IMG/VR virus record: IMGVR_UViG_3300011934_000017
Span: 156,238 to 220,237 of that record
Reading direction: 5' to 3' (one strand)
DNA length: 64,000 bases
Part shown: positions 1,942-44,617 of the stretch, piece after piece
Numbering within the stretch: the stretch's first letter is position 1
Layout of the letters: each line of letters starts with the position of its first letter
The notes under the pieces: generated by a model
What the model was told of the DNA's origin: nothing
Databases searched by the model: none
Seen by the model: only the letters and a program-made list of their open reading frames with translations
Program-made: the position numbers and the translations under genes

Positions 1942-1991
1942 GTGTAAATATAGTCATTATTTACACATAAATGTAAATAGCATCTATATAA
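1942..1991. promoter_or_regulatory. Divergent promoter region with three TGTAAATA copies
   Basis: GTGTAAATA-N7-TATTTACAC perfect inverted repeat at 1942-1966, plus TGTAAATA 1972-1979 followed by TATATAA, between divergent nuclease and primase genes. Confidence 0.7.
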
Positions 1992-4265: not shown

Positions 4266-4850
4266 TTACAACTTTGGACTAGATTCGAAGTGGTTTAGGA
4301 AAGAGTTTAGTCTGTTAGGTCCTTCCAAACATTCAAATGGTTCTAAGTCAAAATGCTTGCAAGCATGATAGATTCCCATAAGCGAACAGTCCAGTTCGTG
4401 CACCGTTTTTCTTTCAGCTTTTGGCAGAGGTTTTACCAGCTCTTTGAGTTCATCGTAAAGCTCATTCAGAGGTTTAACGTCTTCCTCTTTGAACCTTCGG
4501 TTGAAGCTGTTCTTCCAGGTCGATGCGGTGTACAGATGGAGTTGCGGGTACAAAGTCACAAGAATACCGAGCATCATGTTGATGGACTCTATGGTAATTC
4601 CTTTGAGACCTCTTGATTGAAAGCGTTCAGCAACAACCAAATCAAAAGGACCGAACTCGCTTTCCAGACTAAGAATTTCTGCCATGAAGCTGCGATACTC
4701 GTTACGAATCGTAGCAGGGTTTTTAATCGTGTCGTAAACAAGCTTGGTTCCCATAACGCGAATTTTTAAGCGGGAGCTTGATGCGAGTTTAATAACGGAT
4801 GCGGCGTAGTTTGTGGTGCCGGGGTCCATTGAGAGTACAGTTATTGTCAT
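4266..4850 (-). CDS. ruvC: RuvC-like Holliday junction resolvase
   Basis: LSMDPGTTNYA, VVAERFQ, E-SINM and HELD acidic motifs; ATG 4850 with GGAGG RBS. Confidence 0.8.
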   Translation of the reverse strand: MTITVLSMDPGTTNYAASVIKLASSSRLKIRVMGTKLVYDTIKNPATIRNEYRSFMAEILSLESEFGPFDLVVAERFQSRGLKGITIESINMMLGILVTLYPQLHLYTASTWKNSFNRRFKEEDVKPLNELYDELKELVKPLPKAERKTVHELDCSLMGIYHACKHFDLEPFECLEGPNRLNSFLNHFESSPKL

Positions 4851-4935
4851 GGGGACCCTCCATAGGTATATAGCGCAAATTACTAAACGAAGGTCTGATA
4901 ATTTCAATTACATGCTAGAGTCTCAGGAGAATGAC

Positions 4936-6090
4936 ATGGCTAGAATACGCAGAGGTACGGGAGGCAAGCTCCGTAAAAATGCAAAGAACTTTACGCACAA
5001 ACAAGCGCAAGCACGTTTGCAAGAAACGGTAGCACCCTTTAACAAACAGGTAGATAACTCGCTACGAGTAAATGCTGTAGAGATTGATTATTACCAGACA
5101 CAAAACAAAATAGGCAGACCATGTACTTGCGACAAGATACAAATATATGATGAACAAAAGACGCGAGACGGTGGCAGCAATTCAAATCATATAGAACCAG
5201 TTGTACCTACCGTAGACGAAGACAGTAGCTCAAGATTAGATATTGAGCTTCAGGACGACAATCTGTTTGGTGATGGGCCTGCTGAAAAGCTGTACGGTGA
5301 AAACGTATATGATGTTAGTGGTTCCGACAATCTGAAAGACGACGATATTCCTGACGAAATATATCGAAACATGTTGGCAGGCGAAGGCGACGTAGCCATG
5401 TCTGAAACCTCCATGTTCGGTTCAAATGCTAACTGTGGAATATGCTATCGTGTAGGTTTCCAGCCGGGGTACAAGTCATACGGCAAACAGCGTACATTGT
5501 TGACCACGTGGGACATTAAAGACATAAGCAGTTATAATGTTGTCACGACCGAGACACCTAATAAGATGCGGCGTCAAGGCCCCAAAACAGACTACACGTT
5601 TGTTGAGTTCACCTTGTTCGTTCCGAAGTATTTCAAGTCTTGTATTTTCAGCATTCGAAACAACACACAGATTCTACAAGGTGAGCGGATTCGAGCGTTT
5701 AACCAACCGCTGACTTTGAAAACGTTGAAAGACAATGCAGGCAAAGAAATTGTGGTTCGAGTGGATGCGTTGGAGTTCACGCATATTGTTGTCGAGTTTG
5801 ATCTAGGTGTTCAAAAGACATATGCCAATCTAGGACCAGAAAGCCAAGCGCTTGACTATTCCAAGATGGATGCGCTTTCAAACTTTCCTTTAGTTCTTCC
5901 TCCTTCTATTCACGAGGTCAATACAGGTGATGTTATAGTCATCAAAGACCGAAAACTGGTACTAAAAATCATAGACCTGGAGAGAAAGATAACAGCAGAT
6001 AAGAGGCAATTAGAATGGACAGTTCAAACTCGACTAATCCAAAAAACAGAACCCTTGAGAGACATTGCGAAGGGCATGAAGATTCTGTAG
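4936..6090 (+). CDS. Putative virion structural protein with CxC...CxxC motif (possibly head closure/neck type)
   Basis: AGGAGA RBS before ATG 4936; PCTC and CGICYRVGFQPGY. The function is inference. Confidence 0.55.
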   Translation: MARIRRGTGGKLRKNAKNFTHKQAQARLQETVAPFNKQVDNSLRVNAVEIDYYQTQNKIGRPCTCDKIQIYDEQKTRDGGSNSNHIEPVVPTVDEDSSSRLDIELQDDNLFGDGPAEKLYGENVYDVSGSDNLKDDDIPDEIYRNMLAGEGDVAMSETSMFGSNANCGICYRVGFQPGYKSYGKQRTLLTTWDIKDISSYNVVTTETPNKMRRQGPKTDYTFVEFTLFVPKYFKSCIFSIRNNTQILQGERIRAFNQPLTLKTLKDNAGKEIVVRVDALEFTHIVVEFDLGVQKTYANLGPESQALDYSKMDALSNFPLVLPPSIHEVNTGDVIVIKDRKLVLKIIDLERKITADKRQLEWTVQTRLIQKTEPLRDIAKGMKIL

Positions 6091-7505
6091 GAAGAAAGAA
6101 TTACATTGTCACCGTAAAAAGAAATGTCGTCAAAGAAGACGTGCTGGATGAATTACAGCGCCCAGAATGCGGATGCGTCCATCGAAGCGTCGAAGTAACC
6201 GACTTCCAATCGTTGAGCAGAAGGAATTTCACAGTAGCTTTGACTGTGGAAGAGCGGGATATCCTGAGAGAAAGCGACAATGTGGTTGATGTTGTTTTGG
6301 AAGAAGGCTTCAATAGAATGAAGCCTGTGCTTGAAGAGCAACTGATTAATCCTGCTTTTGAGAATAGCGCTTCAAGCACCCACGACAACTGGGCTCTGGA
6401 TCATTGTGCGTTTCGAAACGGATACAAGTACATTTACTCGCACACCGGAAAGAACGTAGACATAATCTTCATTGACTCAGGTGTGGACCCTAATCACTCT
6501 GAGTTCGAACAGAACGGTGTATCCAGAGTCCGCGTTATTGAATGGGAAGCTGGACAGTTCAGCACTAAGCCAGATCAATACGTAGACACGGAGGGTCATG
6601 GGACTGGTGTGTCTAGCTGTGGTGTAGGCAAAAGACAAGGCTTCGCAAAAGACAGTGACATATATAGCATAAAGATTTTTGATAATGATGCCTACAGCCC
6701 GTTAAAAGCGTTGCAGCTTGCGCGTACTTGGCACAATCAAAAGACGAACGGTCGTCCTACCATAGTGAACAATAGCTGGGGATATTCAGCGGAGTATCCA
6801 CCTGGGCATCCTAAAGCAGGACAAAAGCATCCTGTTCAAGTAGCTGTGATAGATGCTGAAATCGAATCCATGATAGACGCGGGCATTATAGTAGTAAGCG
6901 CAGCAGGAAATGAAAATCACCACGTAGCCGCAGAAGGCACTGCCGAATACGATGATTTTTACTACACAGACAGCAGCGGTAACTACACCGAAATTATGGA
7001 GGATGCTGCATACTTTGATAGGAACAATCGATACACGCCGGGCGGTTCTGCCGAGACGATATGCGTTGGTTCAATAGGTGAGTTCTATCCTACTTCCAGA
7101 TTCATAAGGTCATGGTTTTCTAATTTTGGAAGTAGGGTAGACATATTTGCTCCAGGACGTGTGATTCAGTGTGCTCAGTCCTTAACAACAAACGATCTAA
7201 AGAAAACCAATGGTACTTCTTTTTCTTCCGGCATTCTGAGCGGTATAATTGCGCTTTGGTTAGAGATAAACCCGACTGCGAATCAAATGGATGTTAGAAA
7301 ATGGCTGAGTAGGCATGCCTTTTCAAGCGAGGTCGTAGGCAGTTTAGAAGGTGCAGAAAATCAAACAGCCAGAGTATTGTTCAACGGTGTCAGAGCAGCT
7401 AAAGACACTCCTCATACAATACTGTTGAAGCAAGGTAATCAATGGTATCCAGTACAACATATAACCAGCAATAAACGAGCCGTATATGGCAGGAGAATTT
7501 CATGA
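6015..7505 (+). CDS. Subtilisin-family (S8) serine protease with I9-like prodomain
   Basis: Triad motifs FIDSGV, EGHGTGV, NGTSFS; oxyanion AAGNE; NNSWG, FSNFGSRVDIFAPG. Start uncertain (76-nt overlap with the upstream gene). Confidence 0.9.
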   Translation: MDSSNSTNPKNRTLERHCEGHEDSVGRKNYIVTVKRNVVKEDVLDELQRPECGCVHRSVEVTDFQSLSRRNFTVALTVEERDILRESDNVVDVVLEEGFNRMKPVLEEQLINPAFENSASSTHDNWALDHCAFRNGYKYIYSHTGKNVDIIFIDSGVDPNHSEFEQNGVSRVRVIEWEAGQFSTKPDQYVDTEGHGTGVSSCGVGKRQGFAKDSDIYSIKIFDNDAYSPLKALQLARTWHNQKTNGRPTIVNNSWGYSAEYPPGHPKAGQKHPVQVAVIDAEIESMIDAGIIVVSAAGNENHHVAAEGTAEYDDFYYTDSSGNYTEIMEDAAYFDRNNRYTPGGSAETICVGSIGEFYPTSRFIRSWFSNFGSRVDIFAPGRVIQCAQSLTTNDLKKTNGTSFSSGILSGIIALWLEINPTANQMDVRKWLSRHAFSSEVVGSLEGAENQTARVLFNGVRAAKDTPHTILLKQGNQWYPVQHITSNKRAVYGRRIS

Positions 7506-8119
7506 ACGACAAGAGCCTAGAAATTTCAAAGAACATGGTAGTATTAGCACGTCGTCGCAAAGGTAAAGGAAAGAAGCGTGGTTCAGCGCGTAGCCAGATG
7601 CTAAAGATGGTCATGCCTATGCTTTCCCGTGAACATGGAGAGAAACTAGCAGAAGCTATCGAACACAATAACGTAAGTCTGCTACGCCGCACATGGGATT
7701 CAATTAAACATGATCTATCGGAAAAGCTGGCGAATGAAGCTACTGCCAGCGACTTTGCTTCTGAAGTCCAAGAAATCTTTGATAAAGTCTTTAAAGACCT
7801 TGAAGAAGAGTTTCTTTCACAATCAGCGTCTAAGAACAGAGGACGTTTGTTAACAGGCACCGCGCGTATTCCCTCTTTGACTCGTGATCTAATTGCAGAT
7901 GGTTATGTTGAATTTACCGATGCAAAAAATAACGTCTATACTGTGACTATCACGCAGCTTGGTGTTAAGAAAGTTGGAAATCCTCAACCAATAATCTATG
8001 CAGGCGCTTTAATTACCTCTGATTCCGGAATGAAAGAAGGTATATCTGCTTCTGGAATTTATGCTGACGTTTGTTCGGAGATTATTATTTCTGCTATGTC
8101 GCTGTCAGAAAACGATTAA
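7502..8119 (+). CDS. Hypothetical protein
   Basis: ATGA overlap with the protease stop; followed by a terminator. Confidence 0.8.
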   Translation: MNDKSLEISKNMVVLARRRKGKGKKRGSARSQMLKMVMPMLSREHGEKLAEAIEHNNVSLLRRTWDSIKHDLSEKLANEATASDFASEVQEIFDKVFKDLEEEFLSQSASKNRGRLLTGTARIPSLTRDLIADGYVEFTDAKNNVYTVTITQLGVKKVGNPQPIIYAGALITSDSGMKEGISASGIYADVCSEIIISAMSLSEND

Positions 8120-8135
8120 ACCTACCGAAACCTCT

Positions 8136-8163
8136 AAAAAGGGCGGCAAATGCTGCCTTTTTT
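8136..8163 (+). terminator. Rho-independent terminator
   Basis: AAGGGCGGCA-AA-TGCTGCCTTT stem followed by T run. Confidence 0.8.
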
Positions 8164-9130
8164 CGTGTCTGAAGCGTGACGCTGAAACATCAAATGTAAC
8201 AGAGTGTTAACCATGCAAAAGCACTCTACAGGGCTGTTTGAAAGCATTGGGGGCGTCATCCATGCAAAACCAATGCTTTTGCATGTCTGTAAGCAAAATA
8301 CCTTGTTACAATTCGTTACAAAAAAGTTTTGTGTGGAAGAAATGCGTTTTTAGACCGTTTGGAGCCTCTGTCCTGTTAAAAAACGTCAAAATATCAACCT
8401 TGTTTTTTAGACGCCTTAAAATCAGGCTAAAAATCACTCATTTTTAACGATTTCCTCAAAACCAAAAAGTGTCAATACGCAGTATTGGCGCAGATTGCGT
8501 TGAGCAGCAAAGCGTGAAGAGCTAAGCGAGGCGCAGCCGAGCATTAGCGATGATGCTTGAGTAATGCCTCAGCAAACAAGAGACGCTAGGCGGCGCGAAC
8601 ACTTAGAGCCCGTCTCGTCCAGAAGCGTTGAGCGCAGCGAATAAGCGAAGGGGTTCCAAGCGAAGCGTTAAGCGTTCCAAGCGCTGCGAGGCAGCGCGAT
8701 AGCAACGAGCGTAGCGAGTTGCTTAAAAGAACCTATCCTACGCGATCCTACGACTGATTCATTTAAAGAACGTTAAGCAATTAAAAATTGCATTCTTTTG
8801 GATCATGTTAAAACAGGCCGAACTCTGTCTTTGCTAAGACCATAGCAGACCTTAAAACAAGGTGAATTAATAGGACGTGTGGAATTAAATGAGCCAGTCG
8901 TAGGACTGCGTAGTGTTGTATAATGTTAAAGGTCCAACTCGCTACGCTCGTCGTCCCTAACGCTGCTTCGCAGCGTTTCTCTAATCCTTTCCGCTTCGCG
9001 GTACCGCGGGCTAACGCCCGCTCTCGCTCACTTCGTTCGCTCACCTTAAAAAACCTAATTTGTCAGTTCAAAAATCAAAGTCTTTTCAAGACAAACTTTT
9101 TAAATGAAAAACTTTTGTTGCGCGCTTTAA
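8164..9130. other. Non-coding dyad-symmetric region; candidate replication origin
   Basis: Largest gene-free gap; 17-bp perfect IR 8705-8721/8935-8951, nested 15/17 IR 8738-8754/8897-8913, AT-rich core, strand-specific hairpins, flanking A/T tracts. Confidence 0.55.
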
Positions 9131-9131
9131 G

Positions 9132-9139
9132 TGTAAATA
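9132..9139 (+). promoter_or_regulatory. TGTAAATA promoter motif upstream of the modification operon
   Basis: Exact motif copy ending 34 nt before ATG 9173. Confidence 0.65.
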
Positions 9140-9172
9140 TTGAACAGATTATATGGAAAACCGGAGATTACG

Positions 9173-10648
9173 ATGGGAAAACAGTTACCCGAAGAGCTAA
9201 GGTATCAGCTTCTTGTTTTCGACTATAAGAAAGCTAACAAGGCACGCAAGCTCTGGAAAAAACGTAAAGGAGATAAGGATAAAGAAGCCCATAAAAAGTT
9301 TTGCTATGGATTAGGAGCAAAGCTAGACGTTTCTCCGAAAGTAGTTAGCTTCATCGTCAAAAACAATAAATGGGCAGATCAAAAGCCCGCAGAGCATGTA
9401 AAATCATTACCAACAGGCCTTCAAGAATACGATAAACCTTCTTTGAAGCCTGAAGCCTTAGTCAGAGGAAGAGAATTATACATATCTCCTAAAAACTGGC
9501 GCAGGCTCAACGAGCATTACACCAAAGGAAAAATAAAGAAAGCTATTGTTCGCGCTGTTAGAAAGCTAGATTTACCTGCACCTGTTCAACCTATAAGCCA
9601 AGAGCAAGCAGATGATAGCTTTCGAGCACTGAAAAAGTTGCGTTCTGACAGCATGATAAAACGTATGCCTACCTGCACACGGTGGGATTATAAATACGGT
9701 ATTTCCGACGTTGTTATTGACGCACCTCGAACAGGAAACGAATGCTCAAACTTTTATCATCAGGAGTCACGTTGGTGGTGCGACTATCAGAGTATTCCGT
9801 CACCGATGAAAGTATGGAATTCTGATCTTCACATGTATTCCATGATGAATGCTTTATGGACGTTGAAGTTTAAGAAGATTACAGGACCAGAGCTTCGCAC
9901 AGCTATAAGTGTCCGTAAATATGTGGCTAGTCAGTTTAAACCTTCTGCCGCCAAAGCGTTTTACGAGCTATTTGACTGCAAGCACGTTTACGATCCTTCC
10001 AGTGGCTGGGGAGACCGTCTAGCAGGCTTCATGGCAGCTAAATGCACCAAGTCCTATTGCTCTACGGATCCCAACAGCAGACTGTACGACGACTATGAAT
10101 TGCAGAAAAATCGGTACGGTGGAAAGAAAGAAATAAACATGTACTGTCACGGTAGTGAAATCAAAGGTGGTGTTCGCAAGATGTACGGACACAGAGTTGA
10201 TACTGTCTTTACTTCGCCTCCTTATTTCAATGCCGAACGCTACAGCGAAGACGAAGGCCAAAGCTTTAGGCAGTTTGATGAAATAAGTGCGTGGCGTGAA
10301 AATTTCCTGTTTCCTTCTTTGAAAAATGCGTGGAATGCTTTGACTTCAGAAGGTGAACGCGGTGGCATTCTAGCAATCAATATTTCGGACATATACAACT
10401 CTTCGGATAAAACTCGCGGTGAGATATGCGACCCTATGAACGATTACATATCTTCGCTGAAAGGTGCTCGATACATCGGTTGTATTGGTTTGCGTCTAGC
10501 TAAACGTCCTGAGAGCGGTGCACTTGAAGGTAAACAAGGTGCAAGTATCGAACCTATCTGGGTCTGGGCTAAAGGTGGCTCTTGGGAGCTAGACGATTAT
10601 ATAGATAACGGATTTAAGACTAAGAAAGTAAAAGGTCTTTGGGGATAA
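9173..10648 (+). CDS. SAM-dependent amino (N4-C/N6-A type) DNA methyltransferase
   Basis: Motif I YDPSSGWGDR and motif IV FTSPPYF; long basic N-terminal extension; GGAG RBS before ATG 9173. Confidence 0.85.
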   Translation: MGKQLPEELRYQLLVFDYKKANKARKLWKKRKGDKDKEAHKKFCYGLGAKLDVSPKVVSFIVKNNKWADQKPAEHVKSLPTGLQEYDKPSLKPEALVRGRELYISPKNWRRLNEHYTKGKIKKAIVRAVRKLDLPAPVQPISQEQADDSFRALKKLRSDSMIKRMPTCTRWDYKYGISDVVIDAPRTGNECSNFYHQESRWWCDYQSIPSPMKVWNSDLHMYSMMNALWTLKFKKITGPELRTAISVRKYVASQFKPSAAKAFYELFDCKHVYDPSSGWGDRLAGFMAAKCTKSYCSTDPNSRLYDDYELQKNRYGGKKEINMYCHGSEIKGGVRKMYGHRVDTVFTSPPYFNAERYSEDEGQSFRQFDEISAWRENFLFPSLKNAWNALTSEGERGGILAINISDIYNSSDKTRGEICDPMNDYISSLKGARYIGCIGLRLAKRPESGALEGKQGASIEPIWVWAKGGSWELDDYIDNGFKTKKVKGLWG

Positions 10649-10649
10649 T

Positions 10650-11360
10650 ATGGCACATATCATTGAAGCAAACAGTATCGACAGTCTTTGGTATCGTACT
10701 ATGAATACCTTACTGACTGAAGGCGATAAGATTAGCGGTATTCAAGAAATTCCTAATCTGATCTTGGTTCTTAAAAAGAATTTTCGATCCTCTGAGTTTT
10801 TCGATAAAGAGTTTCGTCGTATTTTTGGAGACGAACGAATAGACTTTGCATCTTCTGTAACGTTTGTTCCTCCGAAAGAAGGCATGGTAAGTCCTTCATA
10901 CGAACAGAATGAGCCCAAAGCTAAGTGGACGAAAACTTACTGGGGTCGTATGATCAGTTTTGACGGAAGTGTTAATCAGATTGAGGAAGCAATCAAAAAG
11001 CTTTCTAAAGGTAAGAATACCAAGATGATTTCTATAGGTATTTATGCGCCTTCTTCCGATCATCGCAAAGTCATGGGTGGTGTGCCTTGTATGACTGCTA
11101 TCGATATAAAGCCTAGAAATGGAAAGATTGATCTATCTGTTTTCATGAGGTCTATGCGATTCTCTAAGTCGGGTTATGGAGACGTTCATGCCTTGTGTGA
11201 ACTAGGTAAATATATCTGTGAGCGCTCTAACATGGAAATGAACAGCCTCACCATGTTTGCGACCTCTGGACACACTTTTTACTCTGGTGAAGAGTTTACA
11301 AACTGTAAAGCTCTTATGGAATCAATGAAAGAACGCAAAGCAGAGAAGGTAAGAATATGA
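10650..11360 (+). CDS. Atypical thymidylate-synthase-fold protein (dCMP-hydroxymethylase-like Asp)
   Basis: YWGR...NQ, PC147, RS167-168, D178 at the E. coli N177 position, H208; R170 replaces the conserved D169. Confidence 0.8.
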   Translation: MAHIIEANSIDSLWYRTMNTLLTEGDKISGIQEIPNLILVLKKNFRSSEFFDKEFRRIFGDERIDFASSVTFVPPKEGMVSPSYEQNEPKAKWTKTYWGRMISFDGSVNQIEEAIKKLSKGKNTKMISIGIYAPSSDHRKVMGGVPCMTAIDIKPRNGKIDLSVFMRSMRFSKSGYGDVHALCELGKYICERSNMEMNSLTMFATSGHTFYSGEEFTNCKALMESMKERKAEKVRI

Positions 11361-12172
11361 AGCTCAGCCTTAATAATCCAGTTGAAACCCATCGTATTGG
11401 CAAATACGAAGTCTTTGTCAAGCGTGATGATATGATGGGTGATAATAAAATTCTTCCACCTTGGGGAAAGATGGACGCCATTGATAGTATTCTTCAAAGA
11501 ATGGATCTTAGCGTACCTCTTATACAACTGAATGTCTTTGGTTCTTGGAGTGGTTGGGCACTCGCACGTCTCGCTAAAAAGTATGATTGCGAAGTACATG
11601 TGGTTCATCCTAAGACGAAGAAAATCACTGACGACTATATAGGTGTGATGGAAGAAGCAGGTGCTATCATTCATCCTATTCGACATAATATGATGCGCGT
11701 TTTGTACGCTCAGACGAACAACAGGGCGAAAGAAGAAGGTATGAGAATGCTGCCGTATGCATTCAACACACCGAAATATCTAAACGCTATGGCAAGACGT
11801 TTACGCGCTACTTTAGAAGAGCTGGGTCCCATAGATAACTTGGTGGTAAGCTCTGGTAGTGGTGTGACTGTTACGGGACTGTCTAAACCTTTTCTTGATC
11901 TAAATCCTAAAGGTCAAGTCTACACTGTTTGCGTTTCGTCCGAAAATTCGATTCGTAAAACGTTTAACAGTCGTGAAGTCAGCACTGATCCTGTTCACAT
12001 TATCAAGTCACCGTATGAGTTTGGTGATACGATGCCTAAAGTTGAAGTTCCTTTCTCTTGTAATCAGTTTTGGGATAAGAAAGCTTGGCATTGGTTGACG
12101 GAGAACAAGAGCATTCTTAAAGGTAAGCGTACACTGTTCTGGAATCTAGGTGGTGAGTATACATTTTTGTGA
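11357..12172 (+). CDS. PLP-dependent fold-type II enzyme (ACC deaminase/D-cysteine desulfhydrase-like)
   Basis: VKRDD, PPWGK (putative PLP Lys), SSGSGVT phosphate loop, LFWNLGG; ATGA overlap with the upstream gene. Confidence 0.85.
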   Translation: MKLSLNNPVETHRIGKYEVFVKRDDMMGDNKILPPWGKMDAIDSILQRMDLSVPLIQLNVFGSWSGWALARLAKKYDCEVHVVHPKTKKITDDYIGVMEEAGAIIHPIRHNMMRVLYAQTNNRAKEEGMRMLPYAFNTPKYLNAMARRLRATLEELGPIDNLVVSSGSGVTVTGLSKPFLDLNPKGQVYTVCVSSENSIRKTFNSREVSTDPVHIIKSPYEFGDTMPKVEVPFSCNQFWDKKAWHWLTENKSILKGKRTLFWNLGGEYTFL

Positions 12173-12183
12173 GGATTGAATAA

Positions 12184-13026
12184 ATGGGCAAGCCGAAAGT
12201 TAAAGAATGTTTGATACGTAACCTGGAAAGATATGACGGACCTTTTGCTGTTCTTCTGTCGGGTGGTGCAGACAGTCACGCTAATCTTTTCGCATTACTT
12301 GAGATGGGCGCAGACGTACACGTATATAGCTGCACCTTAGAAGACAGGGAAAGCAGGGATTTTATTTGTGCTCGCAGGACTGCTGAAATCTTTGATCTAC
12401 CTTTCACACCTGTTATTTTACCTACAGACCTCGACCAGCTCCTTGTAGATATTCGAGAGAACATGAGTCTTATCGGAACAAAAGGCAAGGTAGAGGTAGA
12501 AGCTTTATGGGCGTTTCGTAAAGCCGTTGATATTATAACAGAACCTAGTATCGTCAGCGGTCTGTCAGCAGGTATGTATTTTTGTTTGACCAAGAAAGGC
12601 AGCATACACTACGCACATACAGGAAGAATCGACGAATATCGTAGAGAGACATTTAAAAGAGCCTCTAATCCTAATAATCAAGGGGCCAAGATGAAACGAT
12701 ATTCGAAAAGCGTTGGAAAGAAGTGGATAAATCCTTGGATAACCCGAGGAATGCTAAAGACGTTCTTAGGAACTACATGGGAAGATGTAAATAAACCACG
12801 ACAAAAAGAAGCGATCCGCGCAGACTTTGAAAAATACTTTGCAAAAACCAAAGTGTTTAATCAACGAGACATGCACAAAGGTGATAGCGGTATGTCTGAG
12901 CTATTCGCTAAATTGTTGGAAGACCCTAAGGTAAATGTTAGGAATCATAAATCTGTTGTTGGTATCTACAATATGATACGAGCAGAAGAGCTGGCCAGAG
13001 TAAATAAAGGCCCTGGCTTGTTCTAG
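12184..13026 (+). CDS. Asparagine-synthetase-like PP-loop amide ligase without glutaminase domain
   Basis: LLSGGADS PP-loop, IVSGLSAGMYF, INPW, KEAIR, KGDSG; 280 aa with no N-terminal Ntn domain. Confidence 0.75.
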   Translation: MGKPKVKECLIRNLERYDGPFAVLLSGGADSHANLFALLEMGADVHVYSCTLEDRESRDFICARRTAEIFDLPFTPVILPTDLDQLLVDIRENMSLIGTKGKVEVEALWAFRKAVDIITEPSIVSGLSAGMYFCLTKKGSIHYAHTGRIDEYRRETFKRASNPNNQGAKMKRYSKSVGKKWINPWITRGMLKTFLGTTWEDVNKPRQKEAIRADFEKYFAKTKVFNQRDMHKGDSGMSELFAKLLEDPKVNVRNHKSVVGIYNMIRAEELARVNKGPGLF

Positions 13027-13038
13027 TCGGAGAATGCA

Positions 13039-13701
13039 ATGCTTACTTTCCAACATTTAGATAAACTCACCATAAACGAATTTTTTGAAAGCGACTTGTT
13101 TTTTGAGTTGCACTCTCTGTCTGGTATGAGCATATTTAGCGGTAGTACGGAAACAGTAAAAGAGAAATTGCTAGATTCTGTACACAACCAACAAGAAAAG
13201 GTTTCACACAACCTCGTATGTTCGAATGGAAAACCTGTTGGTTTCTTTTCTTTGAAGACGCACAGTACCTACTTTTACTACGACACCTTTACAGATACAG
13301 TAGAAGACTTAGGTAATGCGGTAGAGTTTTCTAGTTGGTTTGTTTCTAGTAGCTATAAAAATCTAGTTTCTCCTACCGCCGCTATAATGAGAAAAAGCTT
13401 AGAAATGGCAAGTGACATTGGACGCATTGCTGTGTTTGGTGTGCGAGCACAGTATTACGAAGACGGTACTCCAATGTTTCTTTCTGCGAATAGAGATTGT
13501 TGGAGTCACGAACCGCGACCAGACTACAATATATCTAATGGGCCTAAAAACTTGTCTGTGACGCATCCTTCTTTTCATCCTGATTCTTTTGGTATTTTAA
13601 AAGCTGCTCACCTGTTTGGCTTTAATATGTTTGGTTTAGATGCTTACGACGGGAGTCCTAAATATCGCAAGTTTCTTTCTTCAATGAAATCTGTTGAATG
13701 A
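13039..13701 (+). CDS. Putative GNAT-fold acyltransferase
   Basis: LVCSNGKPVGFFSL strands, EFSSWFVSSSYKN motif-A-like segment, AIMRKSLEMA helix; GGAGA RBS. Confidence 0.5.
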   Translation: MLTFQHLDKLTINEFFESDLFFELHSLSGMSIFSGSTETVKEKLLDSVHNQQEKVSHNLVCSNGKPVGFFSLKTHSTYFYYDTFTDTVEDLGNAVEFSSWFVSSSYKNLVSPTAAIMRKSLEMASDIGRIAVFGVRAQYYEDGTPMFLSANRDCWSHEPRPDYNISNGPKNLSVTHPSFHPDSFGILKAAHLFGFNMFGLDAYDGSPKYRKFLSSMKSVE

Positions 13702-42685: not shown

Positions 42686-44617
42686 ATGACTATAAAATTT
42701 TCTCCGCAAACGTCTTTGTCAGCAGGACGCAAAAGCGATCCCACCAAATTCAAATGGTTCGAGGTCTCTAAAGGTAAAATTCTTTTAGATAATCACCATA
42801 AAGAGTTCGAAGTCGAGCTTAAAAAAGGTGAGAAATTCGGTATCAAAAAAGGTCGGGGAAAATTCATTCTTGTCGATGAAGACGACCTTTCTCTGACCTT
42901 CTCTCTGACTTTGGATGACGTTTCTGCTATTCTGTCGAAGGCTAAAAGCTTTTCTGGTATGATAGATGGTAAGAAAGTGATGCCTGGTAGTCCTAAAGAC
43001 TTTGCAGGCGCGAAGTCTGCACCGTCTGCTTCAAGACGTGTGCCTCCGGAAATGTCCCTGACATACTACAGAGCCTTAGAAAATGTTTTTGGGGTTCTAT
43101 GGCGACCTTTTGCAGGCTACATAAATAAAGGTGAAGGTAAGGGTAAGCCTGCAAAAGGAATGCTTAACAGAATGCTTAAAAGCGCCTACAAGAGTGCTCA
43201 GGAGATTAAGTCTTACGGAGGCAAACTTCCTAAATACCAACATTCTTACCTGGAAAAGTATTACGACTTCTACAATAACACGTTAGCAGAAGTTCTCAAA
43301 AAGCCTGTTCCCGACATTTTGGAGATTAGCGCGCCAGCACGAAGTACCTATAAATTCACTGTTAAAGAATACCGTGAAGATATCAAGTATTTCGCAGACA
43401 TTTTTCTGCTGGATGAAGAGAAATCAACAAAACAAACCCAGAAAATTTTAGCGCAGAAAAAGAACGATGCCGCTCATGGTGTAAAAATGCTTAAATTCCT
43501 GGGAGAGAAACTGCCTTCCACTAAAAAGCATCAGCGTGTTATCGAGGAAGTCCTTGAACCTGCTACGAAAAGTCGTGCTTCGAAAACGCCATCTAATACA
43601 ACTAAGCCACATCCCGGTTTAGAAGTAAAGCAAGGTGCTACACCCAAGCAAGATCGTTCAGGTGAAGCAGCCAAGCGCATCACAGATAAGAACGTCGTTA
43701 CTGCTTTGAAGCGTATGGGTGTAGAGCTTGAGAAGGATCCTTCCGATAAGGCATATCGCGGTGAGGTGACTCCGAAGCTTACTCGTGAGATTAAAAGCGC
43801 TTTTGAAAATGCAGGTTGGGATACCAGCTATCGTAAAGGCGGTTCTAACACTAGAAAGCGAGGGTCGTTTACCGTTCTTTATATGGAGCTGCCTGGCGGA
43901 AAGCGTCATGTTACCATAGCGACTACAGGACGTTCTAAAGGTCGCGTAACAGTAATGCCTCCTACTACCAAAGCTGCGCCTAAAGCTGCTGCGCCTAAAG
44001 CTGCTGCGCCTAAAGCTGCTCCTGCTAAAAAATCGGCTTCTAGTGTTACAAACTACAATGACTATGTAGCTCTTCTGGAACGTAATAGTGACGAACTGGA
44101 TCAAAACGGTATTGATCCTGCGGAAGTAGCACCAGACTTTTTGCGTAATATTAAAGGCTTGCGTTCCTTTATGAATAAAAAGTTTGGTTTAAAGGGCGAA
44201 GATGCTGCTAGAGCCTTAGCCGACGATATCTATATGGGCAGACCTGCTAATCTGCGCCGGGACGAAGGTGTTTCCGACGCGATAGATAATTACGAAGAGG
44301 AAATAGAAGCCACATTCATTCAGGACGTCGCCCGTAACCTGAGACACATGAAAAAGCACAGTAAAGCGATAACCGAAATAAAGCAGAAAGAGATAATAGA
44401 AGGGATGGCGTCGTTCACCTGTAAGTTCGAAGGAACGCCCTTCCAGATAGATGTTGTCTTCCAAGACGTTGTGAAAGGTAAGATATCTGCTCGTGTGTCT
44501 ATCTCCAGTTCCACAATGCGCGGTAGTGTGAGCAAGCGGGCGTTAGGCGCAAAAGCAGAACCTGAAGCTTTGGTTAAGCGCATTGTGAACTTCTTTGAGA
44601 CAGGTGGCAAGTGGTAG
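42686..44617 (+). CDS. Multidomain virion-like protein, paralog family A member 3
   Basis: DPTKFKWFE...LKKGEKFGIKK N-terminal domain; AAPK repeats. Confidence 0.75.
   Translation: MTIKFSPQTSLSAGRKSDPTKFKWFEVSKGKILLDNHHKEFEVELKKGEKFGIKKGRGKFILVDEDDLSLTFSLTLDDVSAILSKAKSFSGMIDGKKVMPGSPKDFAGAKSAPSASRRVPPEMSLTYYRALENVFGVLWRPFAGYINKGEGKGKPAKGMLNRMLKSAYKSAQEIKSYGGKLPKYQHSYLEKYYDFYNNTLAEVLKKPVPDILEISAPARSTYKFTVKEYREDIKYFADIFLLDEEKSTKQTQKILAQKKNDAAHGVKMLKFLGEKLPSTKKHQRVIEEVLEPATKSRASKTPSNTTKPHPGLEVKQGATPKQDRSGEAAKRITDKNVVTALKRMGVELEKDPSDKAYRGEVTPKLTREIKSAFENAGWDTSYRKGGSNTRKRGSFTVLYMELPGGKRHVTIATTGRSKGRVTVMPPTTKAAPKAAAPKAAAPKAAPAKKSASSVTNYNDYVALLERNSDELDQNGIDPAEVAPDFLRNIKGLRSFMNKKFGLKGEDAARALADDIYMGRPANLRRDEGVSDAIDNYEEEIEATFIQDVARNLRHMKKHSKAITEIKQKEIIEGMASFTCKFEGTPFQIDVVFQDVVKGKISARVSISSSTMRGSVSKRALGAKAEPEALVKRIVNFFETGGKW
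43976..44020 (+). repeat. 3 x 15-nt exact tandem repeat (GCGCCTAAAGCTGCT, APKAA)
   Basis: Read directly from the sequence. Confidence 0.9.

What the first reader, a model, noticed from the sequence alone, without database searches (positions are those of the whole stretch)
8500..9050. Dyad-symmetric origin-like element with strand-specific GNA-triloop / tandem-GA DNA hairpins
Seen: perfect 17-bp inverted repeat ACGAGCGTAGCGAGTTG (8705-8721/8935-8951) enclosing a second pair, CTACGC-(GA/AG)-TCCTACGAC (8738-8754/8897-8913, 15/17), around an AT-rich core. Left of centre the + strand folds GCTAAGC-GA-GGC-GCA-GCC-GA-GCATTAGC (8521-8548), GA-GC-GCA-GC-GA (8630-8640), GCGAAGC (8660-8666) and AGCAAC-GA-GC-GTA-GC-GA-GTTGCT (8701-8723). 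Right of centre the same architecture is on the - strand: AACGCTGC-GAA-GCAGCGTT (8977-8959), CCGC-GAA-GCGG (9001-8991) and GA-GC-GA-AC-GAA-GT-GA-GC-GA (9042-9024). Established: d(GNA) triloops and sheared tandem GA pairs are very stable in ssDNA and form on one strand only. Inference: two mirror-image single-strand priming sites flank an unwinding core, giving a bidirectional origin, with CCTACG units as initiator-binding sites.
Basis: partly seen in the sequence, partly recalled or inferred. Interest (0 to 1): 0.82.

Follow-up and report, generated by a model that had tools for sequence, protein, structure and literature searches.

The report
Conserved mirror-hairpin element, likely phage origin
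The largest gene-free stretch of this giant phage genome is a single-copy element, conserved across a whole family of giant phages, whose two halves fold into very stable hairpins on opposite DNA strands; it is most likely the origin of DNA replication, which has not been mapped in any phage of this family, but this is not proven.

Summary
The element is larger than described, about 8455-9045, and lies in the only long ORF-free gap of the 64-kb window. The window comes from a 220-kb jumbo phage contig related to Pseudomonas phages PaBG and Lu11. The same element sits at the same syntenic position in eight related lineages, including cultured PaBG, where it is single-copy and holds the largest ORF-free gap of the genome. 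What is conserved:
- an invariant AGTGTCAA boundary motif that resembles the family's promoter motif;
- a purine-rich left arm that folds on the + strand;
- a GC-poorer core carrying TTGTTAAA...CTGTCTT;
- a pyrimidine-rich right arm that folds on the - strand.

Compensatory changes, G.T wobbles and G..A loop counts all assign the left arm to the + strand and the right arm to the - strand. The perfect 17-bp repeat, the 29-nt repeat and the CCTACG units are lineage-specific and not conserved. The best explanation is a bidirectional, possibly transcription-activated, replication origin (confidence about 0.5). The main rival is one or two structured non-coding RNAs (about 0.25). No replication or transcription data could be obtained.

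The parts
8135..8165 (+). Intrinsic terminator (GGCGGCA-AAT-GCTGCC followed by TTTTTT, preceded by an A-run, so it can act in both directions). It ends the upstream operon (gene 7502-8119).
   Evidence: Sequence; the - strand version is listed; equivalent terminators follow the homologous gene in L037, L038 and L016.
8303..8328 (+). Conserved upstream block TGTTACA-N3/4-GTTACAAAAAAG (two GTTACA units about 10 bp apart).
   Evidence: Aligned in the window, L037, L038 and L035; not enriched elsewhere in the window. Function unknown.
8455..8479 (+). Left boundary block CTCAAAACCAAAAAGTGTCAATACG. AGTGTCAA (8468-8475) is invariant in 8 relatives and present in PaBG. It resembles the family's promoter-like motif AAGTGTAAATA.
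   Evidence: motif statistics; Lu11 has an annotated 'putative middle/late promoter' TCTGTAAATACTGACT at the same place.
8473..8487 (+). Hairpin H1, CAATAC-GCA-GTATTG. The stem is kept by compensatory changes (TAC/GTA, CGC/GCG, TGC/GCA) and the loop varies from 3 to 13 nt but always runs G...A.
   Evidence: pairs 13-24 UA:5 CG:2 UG:1 and 14-23 AU:4 GC:4.
8468..8725 (+). Left arm: GC-rich and purine-rich, 84-98% identical to L037 and 67-83% to L038 while the flanking non-coding DNA is 30-55% identical. It folds on the + strand.
8521..8548 (+). Hairpin GCTAAGC-GA-GGC-GCA-GCC-GA-GCATTAGC. The tandem GA is kept while the inner hairpin changes: GGT-AGA-ACC in L037, C-GAAA-G in L038, GCCG...CGGC in L035.
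   Evidence: Alignments.
8580..8617 (+). Hairpin GAGACG...CGTCTC with four covarying pairs and G.T wobbles that are allowed only on the + strand.
   Evidence: pairs 157-192, 164-187, 167-184, 169-183; one search shows the same pairs broken on the - strand.
8630..8698 (+). Run of mini-hairpins: GA-GC-GCA-GC-GA (8630-8640), GCGAAGC (8660-8666), GCGCTGC-GAG-GCAGCGC (8680-8698).
8701..8723 (+). Hairpin HL, AGCAAC-GA-GC-GTA-GC-GA-GTTGCT. In L038 it is GGGTGCAGC-GA-GC-GCCA-GC-GA-GTTGTACCC, with G.T pairs allowed only on the + strand. It is also the left copy of the 17-bp repeat.
8738..8766 (.). Left arm of the inner inverted repeat (pairs with 8885-8913), carrying two CCTACG units 10 bp apart. Lineage-specific.
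   Evidence: I1. L038 has a repeat of different sequence at the same position. It is weak in L035 and L046 and absent in L043, L044 and L045.
8767..8884 (.). GC-poor core. It holds a conserved local hairpin GCAAT-TAAAA-ATTGC (8775-8789), the conserved motif ATGTTAAAAC-N9-CTCTGTCTTTGCTAAGAC (8803-8840), and the small palindrome GTCTT-TGCT-AAGAC (8827-8840) close to the dyad axis (about 8826-8828).
8885..8913 (.). Right arm of the inner inverted repeat.
   Evidence: I1.
8916..8931 (+). TTGTATAATGTTAAAG, a direct repeat of 8798-8813. It aligns with the conserved TAAATGCTT...GRTAAC block of relatives, just inside the right arm.
   Evidence: D1, D8.
8931..9045 (-). Right arm: GC-rich, pyrimidine-rich on the + strand, and folding on the - strand. 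Its hairpins are HR 8957-8931 (two tandem-GA blocks and a GTA loop, the mirror of HL), AACGCTGC-GAA-GCAGCGTT 8977-8959, CCGC-GAA-GCGG 9001-8991, GCGGGC-GTTA-GCCCGC 9021-9006, and GA-GC-GA-AC-GAA-GT-GA-GC-GA 9042-9024. The conserved end block is CCGCTCTCGC..TTCGCTCAC.
   Evidence: 85.8% of cells paired, 13 of 29 pairs compensatory, 0 of 500 shuffles as high; 13 G.T against 3 A.C.
9055..9062 (+). Conserved right-flank block CCTAATTT (AATCCTAATT in relatives). Function unknown.
9129..9139 (+). Promoter-like motif AAGTGTAAATA for the downstream operon (RBS GGAGA 9163-9167, ATG 9173). It lies outside the element, so the right arm is not the leader of this operon.
   Evidence: the same motif is annotated as a putative middle/late promoter in Lu11.

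Best explanation
The region from about 8455 to 9045 is the single-copy, family-conserved replication origin region of a PaBG/Lu11-like jumbo phage.

Proposed mechanism (inferred): the GC-poor core and the arms are opened, possibly helped by transcription entering from the promoter-like AGTGTCAA motif at the left edge, as happens at T4, T7 and ColE1 origins. Once the strands separate, the purine-rich strand of each arm folds into a row of very stable mini-hairpins with GNA or GNNA loops and tandem sheared G.A pairs. That strand is the + strand on the left and the - strand on the right. In each arm it is the leading-strand template for a fork moving outward. The hairpins would hold the bubble open and could offer structured priming signals to the phage DnaG-type primase (2013-2993). 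The complementary pyrimidine-rich strand cannot fold well. It would stay single-stranded as the lagging-strand template, which is where a DnaB-type helicase loads. The result would be two diverging forks.

Shown: the anatomy, the strand of folding, conservation, single copy and genomic position.

Inferred: origin activity, opening, priming and helicase loading.
For: 1. Conservation and synteny. The same architecture lies after the homologue of gene 7502-8119 in L035, L037, L038, L043, L044, L045, L046, L042 and PaBG. Neighbouring proteins are 34-87% identical. The length from AGTGTCAA to CTCAC is 514-591 nt in seven lineages.
2. Single copy. Profile searches find one left-arm hit and one right-arm hit in the 258-kb PaBG genome. 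Both lie inside its 116153-117629 gap, in the same order, and no second copy occurs in the window.
3. Largest ORF-free gap in the window and in PaBG.
4. Position. The element lies within the replication cluster: primase, PD-(D/E)XK nuclease, Holliday junction resolvase, clamp loader, SbcCD, helicases and PolA. In PaBG it lies 5.3 kb from the point at 110.85 kb where a 134-kb minus-strand gene arm and a 124-kb plus-strand gene arm diverge. It also falls on the broad maximum of the cumulative G-C curve.
5. Strand-specific folding.
- Consensus fold energy is -49.9 (+) against -36.1 (-) kcal/mol for the left arm, and -23.4 (-) against -11.4 (+) for the right arm.
- G.T against A.C cells are 31:3 on the + strand of the left arm and 13:3 on the - strand of the right arm.
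- In the right arm 13 of 29 pairs are compensatory and no shuffle of 500 reaches that.
6. Loop census over seven elements. G..A loops number 28 (+) against 2 (-) in left arms and 20 (-) against 2 (+) in right arms. GNA triloops, a DNA-type stable loop, outnumber GNRA tetraloops 32 to 9.
7. The mirror polarity holds in L035 and L038, where the two arms are not complementary in register. It is therefore selected and not a by-product of a recent inverted duplication.
8. The compositional plan, a GC-rich purine arm, a GC-poor core and a GC-rich pyrimidine arm, is kept in genomes of 42-56% GC.
9. Precedent. GCGNAGC-type mini-hairpins occur at the G4 complementary-strand origin and in ssiA of RSF1010 (PMC13037366). 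RSF1010 oriV carries ssiA and ssiB on complementary strands, exposed by helicase unwinding (PMC8567376).
Against: - There is no direct evidence of replication initiation. Only assembled contigs were available, so no depth profile could be made.
- GC and AT skew switch with gene orientation and are weak. The cumulative curve in the window turns near 2000, not at 8800.
- There are no DnaA boxes or iterons, and no initiator protein is identified. The adjacent 205-aa protein gave nothing informative.
- Several features are typical of a structured RNA gene. The left arm has high primary-sequence conservation. G.T(U) pairs make up 9-13% of paired cells. Some relatives have GNRA tetraloops. A promoter-like motif points into the left arm.
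- Lu11 shows + strand polarity only.
- A more distant relative, L016, has an AT-rich repeat region without these hairpins at the same position.
- In the 277-kb relative (L002/L018), the fetched DNA upstream of the homologue of the downstream gene has no gap, and its copy of the element, if any, was not located.
Confidence: 0.5

Rival explanations
1. The element encodes structured non-coding RNA. Either one RNA of about 270 nt is made from the left arm in the + sense, starting at the AGTGTCAA or TGTAAATA-like promoter, with a second convergent - sense RNA from the right arm, or one + sense RNA of about 600 nt spans both arms. Its role would not be in initiating replication; it could be regulatory, anti-defence or a protein scaffold.
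For: - A promoter-like motif sits at the 5' edge of the left arm. It matches AAGTGTAAATA, which is enriched upstream of genes (11 matches against 3.4 expected; TGTAAATA occurs 12 times on + and 3 times on -). The same motif is annotated as a putative middle/late promoter at the equivalent place in Lu11.
- The arms show strong sequence conservation and covariation.
- G.U-type pairs are frequent.
- Some relatives have GNRA loops.
- Several relatives have a hairpin followed by a T-run just before the operon promoter.
- Lu11 has + strand polarity across the whole gap.
- The element folds with z = -8.6 and -5.1 as RNA.
Against: - The right arm folds on the - strand in 6 of 6 aligned lineages, but no conserved leftward promoter was found to its right.
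- A single + sense RNA would carry UNC loops and U.C/C.U mismatches in the right arm.
- GNA triloops, which have no special stability in RNA, outnumber GNRA loops 32 to 9, and there are no UNCG loops (PMC13037366 reports a Tm of 39 C for r(GCGAAAGC), much lower than for the DNA mini-hairpin).
- No Rfam family matches in any relative.
- No RNA run was listed.
Confidence: 0.25
2. The element is an invertible DNA switch. The perfect 17-bp inverted repeats (8705-8721/8935-8951) would be recombinase sites flanking a 213-bp segment that carries a TATAAT-like promoter (8919-8924) for the downstream DNA-modification operon.
For: The repeat is perfect while its surroundings have diverged. TTGTATAAT lies just inside the right repeat and points at the operon.
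Against: - The long repeats are not conserved in relatives although the element is.
- The operon has its own promoter-like motif outside the segment at 9129.
- Contigs from two runs show a single orientation, although contigs drop rare variants.
- The genes tested with family searches (72-21418 and the largest ORFs) gave no recombinase match.
- The repeat copies are themselves the conserved strand-specific hairpins HL and HR.
Confidence: 0.03
3. The element is a regulatory or boundary region of double-stranded DNA, such as an operator, an insulator or a recombination hot spot, lying in front of the hypervariable DNA-modification cassette. Symmetric sites would be bound by a phage protein.
For: The genes downstream of the element differ in almost every relative: methyltransferase-like, thymidylate-synthase-like, TAGT, an intein-bearing methylase and small ORFs. 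The genes upstream are conserved. The window and L038 have symmetric repeats around the core.
Against: Sites in double-stranded DNA do not explain tandem G.A mismatches kept at fixed places, compensatory stem changes, G.T wobbles confined to one strand, or the 28:2 and 20:2 loop polarity. About 580 nt is large for an operator.
Confidence: 0.1
4. The element is a mobile element remnant (MITE or IS with terminal inverted repeats), or a packaging site or genome terminus.
For: It has inverted repeats. One relative's contig (L037) ends inside the element.
Against: - It has a fixed syntenic position across deep divergence and is single-copy.
- No other copies occur in the window or in PaBG.
- Contigs from two runs bridge it.
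- In PaBG the terminase gene lies about 42 kb away.
Confidence: 0.03

Closest known systems
IncQ plasmid (RSF1010/R1162) oriV with ssiA and ssiB
   Same: Two hairpin-forming single-strand initiation signals lie on complementary strands as an inverted pair. They are exposed when a helicase unwinds the origin. Each primes continuous synthesis, and ssiA contains a CCGAAGG mini-hairpin (PMC8567376; PMC13037366).
   Different: The IncQ signals are single 40-nt sites next to iterons bound by RepC and are used by an archaeo-eukaryotic-type primase, RepB'. Here each arm is 120-260 nt with 4-6 hairpins, there are no iterons, the primase is DnaG-type, there is a 120-150-nt conserved core, and priming was not tested.
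G4-type complementary-strand origin and DnaG-dependent priming signals
   Same: These are stable hairpins containing GCGAAAGC or GCGNAGC-type mini-hairpins. They stay free of SSB and direct DnaG-type primase on single-stranded DNA (PMC13037366). According to the title of reference 8 of PMC8567376, DnaG-dependent priming signals can replace ssiA and ssiB in RSF1010.
   Different: G4 is a single-stranded phage with one signal on one strand. Here there are mirror arrays in a 220-kb double-stranded genome, and there is no sequence similarity.
Transcript-activated or transcript-primed origins (T4 oriF/oriG, T7 primary origin, ColE1 RNA II). This comparison is from my own knowledge and was not checked in a paper here.
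   Same: A promoter sits at the edge of the origin and points inward. A purine-rich transcript would form a stable RNA-DNA hybrid, and the displaced strand here could lock the loop by folding.
   Different: No transcript has been demonstrated. A symmetric second promoter is not conserved. The known examples lack arrays of mini-hairpins.
Phage N4 virion RNA polymerase promoters
   Same: A hairpin with a 3-nt GNA-type loop (GGA or GAA) is extruded from one strand of duplex DNA and recognised in single-stranded form (PMC13037366).
   Different: N4 promoters are single 5-7-bp hairpins with a purine at the loop centre. Here many loops are GTA or GCA, the hairpins come in arrays, and PaBG is described as encoding sigma factors, with no RNA polymerase of its own reported (PMC7412058).
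Herpesvirus lytic origins (HSV oriS/oriL, CMV and EBV oriLyt). This comparison is from my own knowledge.
   Same: These are non-coding elements of a few hundred bp to kb in a large double-stranded DNA virus, with dyad symmetry around an AT-rich centre, strand-specific hairpin forms and associated transcripts.
   Different: The hosts and proteins are unrelated. Those origins have defined sites for an origin-binding protein, and none is identified here.

Membership tests
IncQ-type oriV (ssiA/ssiB) | Two hairpin priming signals on complementary strands in inverted orientation | tested here: met
   Left-arm hairpins fold on the + strand and right-arm hairpins on the - strand, conserved in relatives. 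This shows the geometry only; whether they act as priming signals is unknown.
IncQ-type oriV (ssiA/ssiB) | Adjacent iterons bound by an initiator (RepC), and a RepB'-type primase | tested here: not met
   No repeated units of 9 nt or longer occur three or more times. The primase has a DnaG-type zinc ribbon plus Toprim domain.
IncQ-type oriV (ssiA/ssiB) | Primer synthesis starts at a defined base next to the hairpin | not testable with these tools
   This needs a primase assay on single-stranded templates.
Replication origin (generic, bidirectional) | Site where DNA synthesis initiates (copy-number peak, bubble arcs, autonomous replication of the fragment) | not testable with these tools
   Only assembled contigs with flat depth were available.
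Replication origin (generic, bidirectional) | Compositional skew switch at the site | tested here: inconclusive
   In PaBG the cumulative G-C curve has a broad maximum at 114-130 kb that includes the element (116.2-117.6 kb), but it coincides with the switch in gene strand at 110.85 kb. Within the window the turn is near 2000.
Replication origin (generic, bidirectional) | Easily unwound AT-rich segment | tested here: met
   The core is 6-14 percentage points below genome GC in seven of the eight elements profiled (30-48% GC); PaBG (L047) shows little dip.
DnaA-dependent origin | Clustered DnaA boxes | tested here: not met
   No TTATCCACA match with at most one mismatch in seven of eight gaps; one match in PaBG.
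Described structured RNA families (Rfam 15) | Match to a covariance model at the gathering score | tested here: not met
   No match in the window at E up to 5 apart from two chance-level hits. In seven relatives only tRNAs matched.
N4-type hairpin promoter | Single 5-7-bp stem, 3-nt loop with a central purine, and a virion RNA polymerase of the T7-like family | tested here: not met
   Loops include GTA and GCA, and the hairpins come in arrays. No single-subunit RNA polymerase turned up among the window ORFs tested with family searches (72-21418 and the largest ORFs). The PaBG paper mentions putative RNA polymerase genes but describes only sigma factors. The rest of this genome was not seen.
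Invertible promoter switch | Inverted repeats conserved as recombination sites, both orientations present in the population, and a cognate recombinase | tested here: not met
   The repeats are not conserved. Contigs show one orientation. No recombinase match among the genes tested with family searches.
MITE or insertion sequence | Several copies, variable location, target-site duplication | tested here: not met
   It is single-copy and strictly syntenic.

The most novel reading that the evidence does not exclude
The element is a new kind of origin in which the structure does the work that initiator proteins do elsewhere. Transcription from the boundary promoter or promoters makes purine-rich RNA that stays hybridised. 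The displaced purine-rich DNA strand then locks the loop open by folding into arrays of mini-hairpins with tandem G.A pairs and GNA loops, in mirror image on the two sides. The free pyrimidine strands receive the helicase. No iterons and no dedicated origin-binding protein would be needed. A second unexcluded reading is that the two arms are a convergent pair of a new class of large structured phage RNAs.
Probability: 0.2. Interest if true: 0.85.

Novelty: new variant of a known kind. Interest (0 to 1): 0.62.

Why it matters
To my knowledge, replication origins of jumbo phages are essentially unmapped. The PaBG genome paper does not mention an origin, skew or non-coding elements. This analysis defines one discrete, alignable, single-copy candidate shared by a widespread family. 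That family includes environmental contigs of 200-290 kb and two cultured Pseudomonas phages, PaBG and Lu11. The question can therefore be tested directly with standard laboratory strains. If the element is an origin, it would extend hairpin-based, strand-specific initiation signals from small plasmids and single-stranded phages to very large double-stranded genomes. It would also be a natural case in which DNA mini-hairpins with sheared G.A pairs are kept by selection, shown by covariation. If it is instead an RNA, it is a large, conserved structured RNA class with no match in Rfam.

Tried and rejected
- DNA similarity to deposited phages found no match for the region.
- Rfam and tRNA scans found nothing.
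- The sigma-70 and terminator consensus scan found nothing above background inside the element.
- The exact 17-mer was scanned across viral contigs and gave 10 foreign hits. By my own rough estimate of the collection's size that is about the number expected by chance. Most are intergenic, and some sit in hairpins of the same design: a giant-virus MAG, Klebsiella phage May (twice), and a 191-kb contig I suspect is an iridovirus. I treated this as convergent use of the mini-hairpin motif, not homology, and did not pursue it.
- The conserved 19-mer was scanned and found only in two related contigs.
- The closest relative found first (L002/L018, 277 kb) has no gap next to the homologue of the downstream gene. 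This looked like non-conservation until synteny was followed from the upstream genes instead.
- Reads: only Logan contigs were available, they bridge the region without variants, and they give no depth profile or read ends. No RNA runs were listed.
- DnaA boxes and iterons are absent.
- The neighbouring 205-aa protein as a possible initiator gave no family, no informative atlas hit and only a low-confidence model.
- A long-range left-right duplex as a conserved feature: it is present in minimum-free-energy folds of most relatives, but the arms consist of a repeated motif and its complement, so any register pairs. The specific repeats are not conserved. I rejected it as a defining feature.
- RNAalifold on all eight left arms failed in the 3' half because the MAFFT alignment is poor there.
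- I did not build a covariance model. The element exceeds the 400-column limit, and the result would not separate RNA from DNA.
Full report
**1. What is in the sequence**

- The 17-bp repeat ACGAGCGTAGCGAGTTG (8705-8721/8935-8951) is perfect.
- The inner pair is longer than stated: 8738-8766/8885-8913, 29 nt, 86% complementary.
- Weaker complementary blocks continue outward to about 8629 and 9043.
- The core is AT-rich: 26% GC at 8750-8799 against 44% for the window.

GCGNAGC mini-hairpin sites are about 25-fold enriched. Seven of the 33 in the window (both strands) fall in 551 bp. The four + strand sites are all left of 8720 and the three - strand sites all right of 8940. The 578-nt stretch 8468-9045 folds with z = -8.6 against dinucleotide shuffles.

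On the - strand, 8957-8931 folds as (G)G-GA-CGAC-GA-GC-GTA-GC-GA-GTTG-GA-C(C), the mirror of 8701-8723.

**2. Context**

The window is the last 64 kb of a 220,237-bp viral contig from a stromatolite metagenome. It carries a replication module:
- a DnaG-type primase at 2013-2993, a PD-(D/E)XK nuclease and a Holliday junction resolvase;
- a clamp loader, SbcC and SbcD;
- a 2004-aa helicase, a PolA-type polymerase and a UvsW-like helicase;
- tail genes after these.

The upstream operon ends with an intrinsic terminator at 8135-8165. The next gene starts at 9173 behind a GGAGA ribosome-binding site. The stretch 8120-8913 is the only gap of 350 bp or more in the 64 kb that is free of open frames of 100 codons.

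A motif AAGTGTAAATA is over-represented: 11 matches within one mismatch against 3.4 expected, and the core TGTAAATA occurs 12 times on + and 3 times on -. It lies 30-50 nt upstream of several start codons, including 9129 before the 9173 operon. In the GenBank record of Pseudomonas phage Lu11 the same motif (TCTGTAAATACTGACT, ACTGTAAATATTAGGA) is annotated 'putative middle/late promoter'.

**3. Relatives**

The first relative found, a 277-kb contig, has no gap beside the homologue of the downstream gene. That is because the downstream genes are a variable cassette.

Following the conserved upstream genes instead gives the same picture in L035, L037, L038 (identical in four samples), L042, L043, L044, L045 and L046, and in cultured Pseudomonas phage PaBG (KF147891 116153-117629). 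These genes are the primase, three leftward genes, a 381-aa protein, an S8 peptidase in some lineages, and a 205-aa protein. The 381-aa protein is 34-87% identical across relatives. In every case a non-coding gap of 0.8-1.5 kb follows the 205-aa gene homologue, sometimes after one or two small leftward genes.

Lu11 has a 750-bp gap there. A more distant 200-kb contig (L016) has an AT-rich repeat region with a poly(A) tract of about 30 nt at that position, without mini-hairpins.

**4. What is conserved and what is not**

Alignments and a sliding identity profile show unconstrained DNA (30-55% identity) from 8166 to about 8450, apart from one conserved block, TGTTACA-N-GTTACAAAAAAG. A sharp rise follows at CTCAAAACCAAAAAGTGTCAATAC. 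AGTGTCAA is invariant in eight lineages and present in PaBG.

The left arm, 8468-8725, is 84-98% identical to L037 and 67-83% identical to L038. That is much higher than expected from neighbouring proteins that are 72% and 54% identical. The core keeps TTGTTAAA-N9-11-CTGTCTT. The right arm keeps CCGCTCTCG..TCGCTTCGCTC..CTCAC. The distance from AGTGTCAA to CTCAC is 514-591 nt in seven lineages. The compositional plan, a GC-rich purine arm, a GC-poor core and a GC-rich pyrimidine arm, is kept in genomes from 42 to 56% GC.

Three features are not conserved:
- The 17-bp perfect repeat.
- The 29-nt repeat. L038 has a repeat of different sequence at that place, L035 and L046 have weak ones, and L043, L044 and L045 have none.
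- The CCTACG units.

**5. Which strand folds**

*Left arm.* The consensus structure scores -49.9 kcal/mol on the + strand and -36.1 on the - strand. H1 (8473-8487), the hairpin at 8580-8617 and HL (8701-8723) keep their stems through compensatory changes. The helices contain 31 G.T cells on the + strand, which would be A.C mismatches on the other strand, against 3 the other way. In 8521-8548 the two GA dinucleotides are kept while the inner hairpin is replaced: GGC-GCA-GCC, GGT-AGA-ACC, C-GAAA-G and GCCG...CGGC.

*Right arm.* The scores are -23.4 on the - strand and -11.4 on the + strand. On the - strand 85.8% of cells pair and 13 of 29 pairs show compensatory change. No shuffle of 500 reaches these values, and structures slid by 1-3 columns pair only 30-44%. 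G.T against A.C is 13:3 in favour of the - strand.

*Loop census.* Perfect hairpins with stems of 3 bp or more were counted in seven elements. G..A loops number 28 on + against 2 on - in left arms, and 20 on - against 2 on + in right arms.

In L035 and L038 the arms are not complementary in register. The mirror polarity is therefore an independently maintained property and not only the trace of an inverted duplication.

One caveat: RNAalifold favours G.U pairs on whichever strand it is given, and purine-rich strands offer more of them. The independent per-strand predictions and the loop census do not share that bias.

**6. Single copy and genome position**

Profiles of the left and right arms each find one hit in the whole PaBG genome: 117039-117231 (E = 0.016) and 117378-117459 (E = 0.18). 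Both lie inside the gap and in the same order. No second copy occurs in the window. The PaBG gap contains the largest ORF-free stretch of that 258-kb genome.

PaBG genes run leftward from 235.3 kb through 0 to 110.8 kb, and rightward from 110.9 to 234.9 kb, with few exceptions. The two arms therefore diverge between the RecB/Cas4-like nuclease and the primase. The element lies 5.3 kb to the right of that point. The window has the same arrangement, with divergence at 1929/2013.

The cumulative G-C curve in PaBG has a broad maximum at 114-130 kb. Skew follows gene orientation and has the opposite sign in the window, so it neither confirms nor refutes an origin.

**7. DNA or RNA**

For single-stranded DNA:
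- GNA triloops closed by C-G, the signature of the very stable DNA mini-hairpin, outnumber GNRA tetraloops 32 to 9, and no UNCG loops occur. The review PMC13037366 reports a Tm of 76.5 C for d(GCGAAGC) and d(GCGAAAGC) and 39 C for r(GCGAAAGC).
- The right arm folds on the - strand, but I found no conserved leftward promoter beside it.

For RNA:
- A promoter-like motif points into the left arm.
- G.U-type pairs make up 9-13% of paired cells.
- The left arm has high primary-sequence conservation.
- Some relatives have GNRA loops.
- Lu11 has + strand polarity throughout.

No RNA run was listed, and the one read-laying run returned only contigs. The two readings are compatible if a transcript activates or primes the origin.

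**8. Mechanism proposed (inferred)**

When the core opens, the + strand of the left arm and the - strand of the right arm are the leading-strand templates of forks that move outward. Folding of exactly these strands would keep the bubble open. It would also provide SSB-free structured sites for the phage DnaG-type primase, as at the G4 origin and at ssiA and ssiB of RSF1010, which lie on complementary strands and are exposed by helicase unwinding. The poorly folding pyrimidine strands are the lagging-strand templates, on which a DnaB-type helicase translocates; PaBG encodes one. Transcription from the boundary motif could help opening.

The invariant GTGTC inside AGTGTCAA resembles T7-class primase recognition sites. 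That is a recollection of mine and was not tested.

**9. Comparison with known systems**

The closest analogue in logic is IncQ oriV. The element is not a member of that family, because iterons are absent and the primase is of another class. It also fails the tests for several other families:
- It is not a DnaA-type origin.
- It is not a described RNA family.
- It is not an N4-type promoter.
- It is not an invertible switch.
- It is not a mobile element.

I file it as a new variant of a known kind: an origin-type element with strand-specific hairpin signals. Origin activity is unproven.

**10. Verdict**

I put the origin at about 0.5, structured RNA at about 0.25, a duplex regulatory or boundary element at about 0.1, and the remainder on other explanations. 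The conserved signal is the mirror-image, strand-specific hairpin arrays around a conserved core.

Noticed in passing
window 1943-1979, 9132, 12786, 14773, 15367, 20151, 33577, 44623, 44883, 48146, 52480: TGTAAATA (extended form A-A-G/C-TGTAAATA) occurs 12 times on + and 3 times on -, mostly 30-50 nt upstream of start codons, with two back-to-back copies in the divergent gap 1929-2013. The same motif is annotated as a putative middle/late promoter in phage Lu11. It resembles the T4 late promoter TATAAATA (from my memory).
   Followed up: partly
window 9173-13701; L043 12703-15051; L044 13399-15158; L045 11144-15155: The genes just downstream of the element form a variable cassette of DNA or nucleotide modification genes. 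In the window these are a 491-aa methyltransferase-like protein, a thymidylate-synthase-like protein, a PLP-dependent enzyme and a QueC-like protein. Relatives carry instead a cytosine methylase, one of which is interrupted by an intein with a LAGLIDADG domain, or TAGT, an asparagine-synthase-like gene and others. This suggests hypermodified DNA and a hot spot for cassette exchange.
   Followed up: partly
L037 7196-7221: The contig of the closest relative ends within a few bases of the HL hairpin (GCAACGAGCGTAGCGAGTTGC). This is probably an assembly break caused by the inverted repeat and not a physical genome end.
   Followed up: no
L004 4730-4775; L008 11787-11835; L011 7740-7790; L033 2270-2286 and L007 7700-7716; L014 969-985: The exact 17-mer, and neighbouring hairpins of the same design (stem-GA-GC-GNA-GC-GA-stem), occur in intergenic DNA of unrelated viruses: a giant-virus MAG, two low-GC viral contigs, Klebsiella phage May (twice, one copy between the uvsW-like helicase and the sliding clamp genes), and a 191-kb contig rich in GCGNAGC repeats. 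Nine of the ten foreign hits are intergenic, although by my rough estimate the hit count is about what chance would give.
   Followed up: partly
window 43979-44009 (- strand): Three GCGNAGC sites are spaced exactly 15 nt apart inside ORF 42686-44617. This is probably a short tandem repeat in a coding region.
   Followed up: no
L016 5200-5957: A distant relative has, at the syntenic position, an AT-rich non-coding region with two copies of TTTGAAAAGCGGTTCGG...ATATATA about 107 bp apart and a poly(A) tract of about 30 nt, but no mini-hairpin arms. It may be a different solution for the same function.
   Followed up: no
window 8200-8300: CCATGCAAAA occurs twice (8211, 8260). The second copy is part of a perfect 9-bp hairpin, CATGCAAAA-CCAATGC-TTTTGCATG. 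This region is not conserved in relatives.
   Followed up: no
window 4813-6090 and 6015-7505: The mechanical ORFs overlap by 76 nt, and 4813-6090 also overlaps the leftward gene 4266-4907. Gene calls in relatives show that the true starts are later: the 381-384-aa protein starts near 4945, and the S8 peptidase starts after 6090.
   Followed up: partly
L047 (PaBG) 9563-9690: In PaBG a pyrimidine-rich insert of about 140 nt lies between the AGTGTCAA boundary motif and the purine-rich left arm, so the element there is longer and more complex.
   Followed up: no
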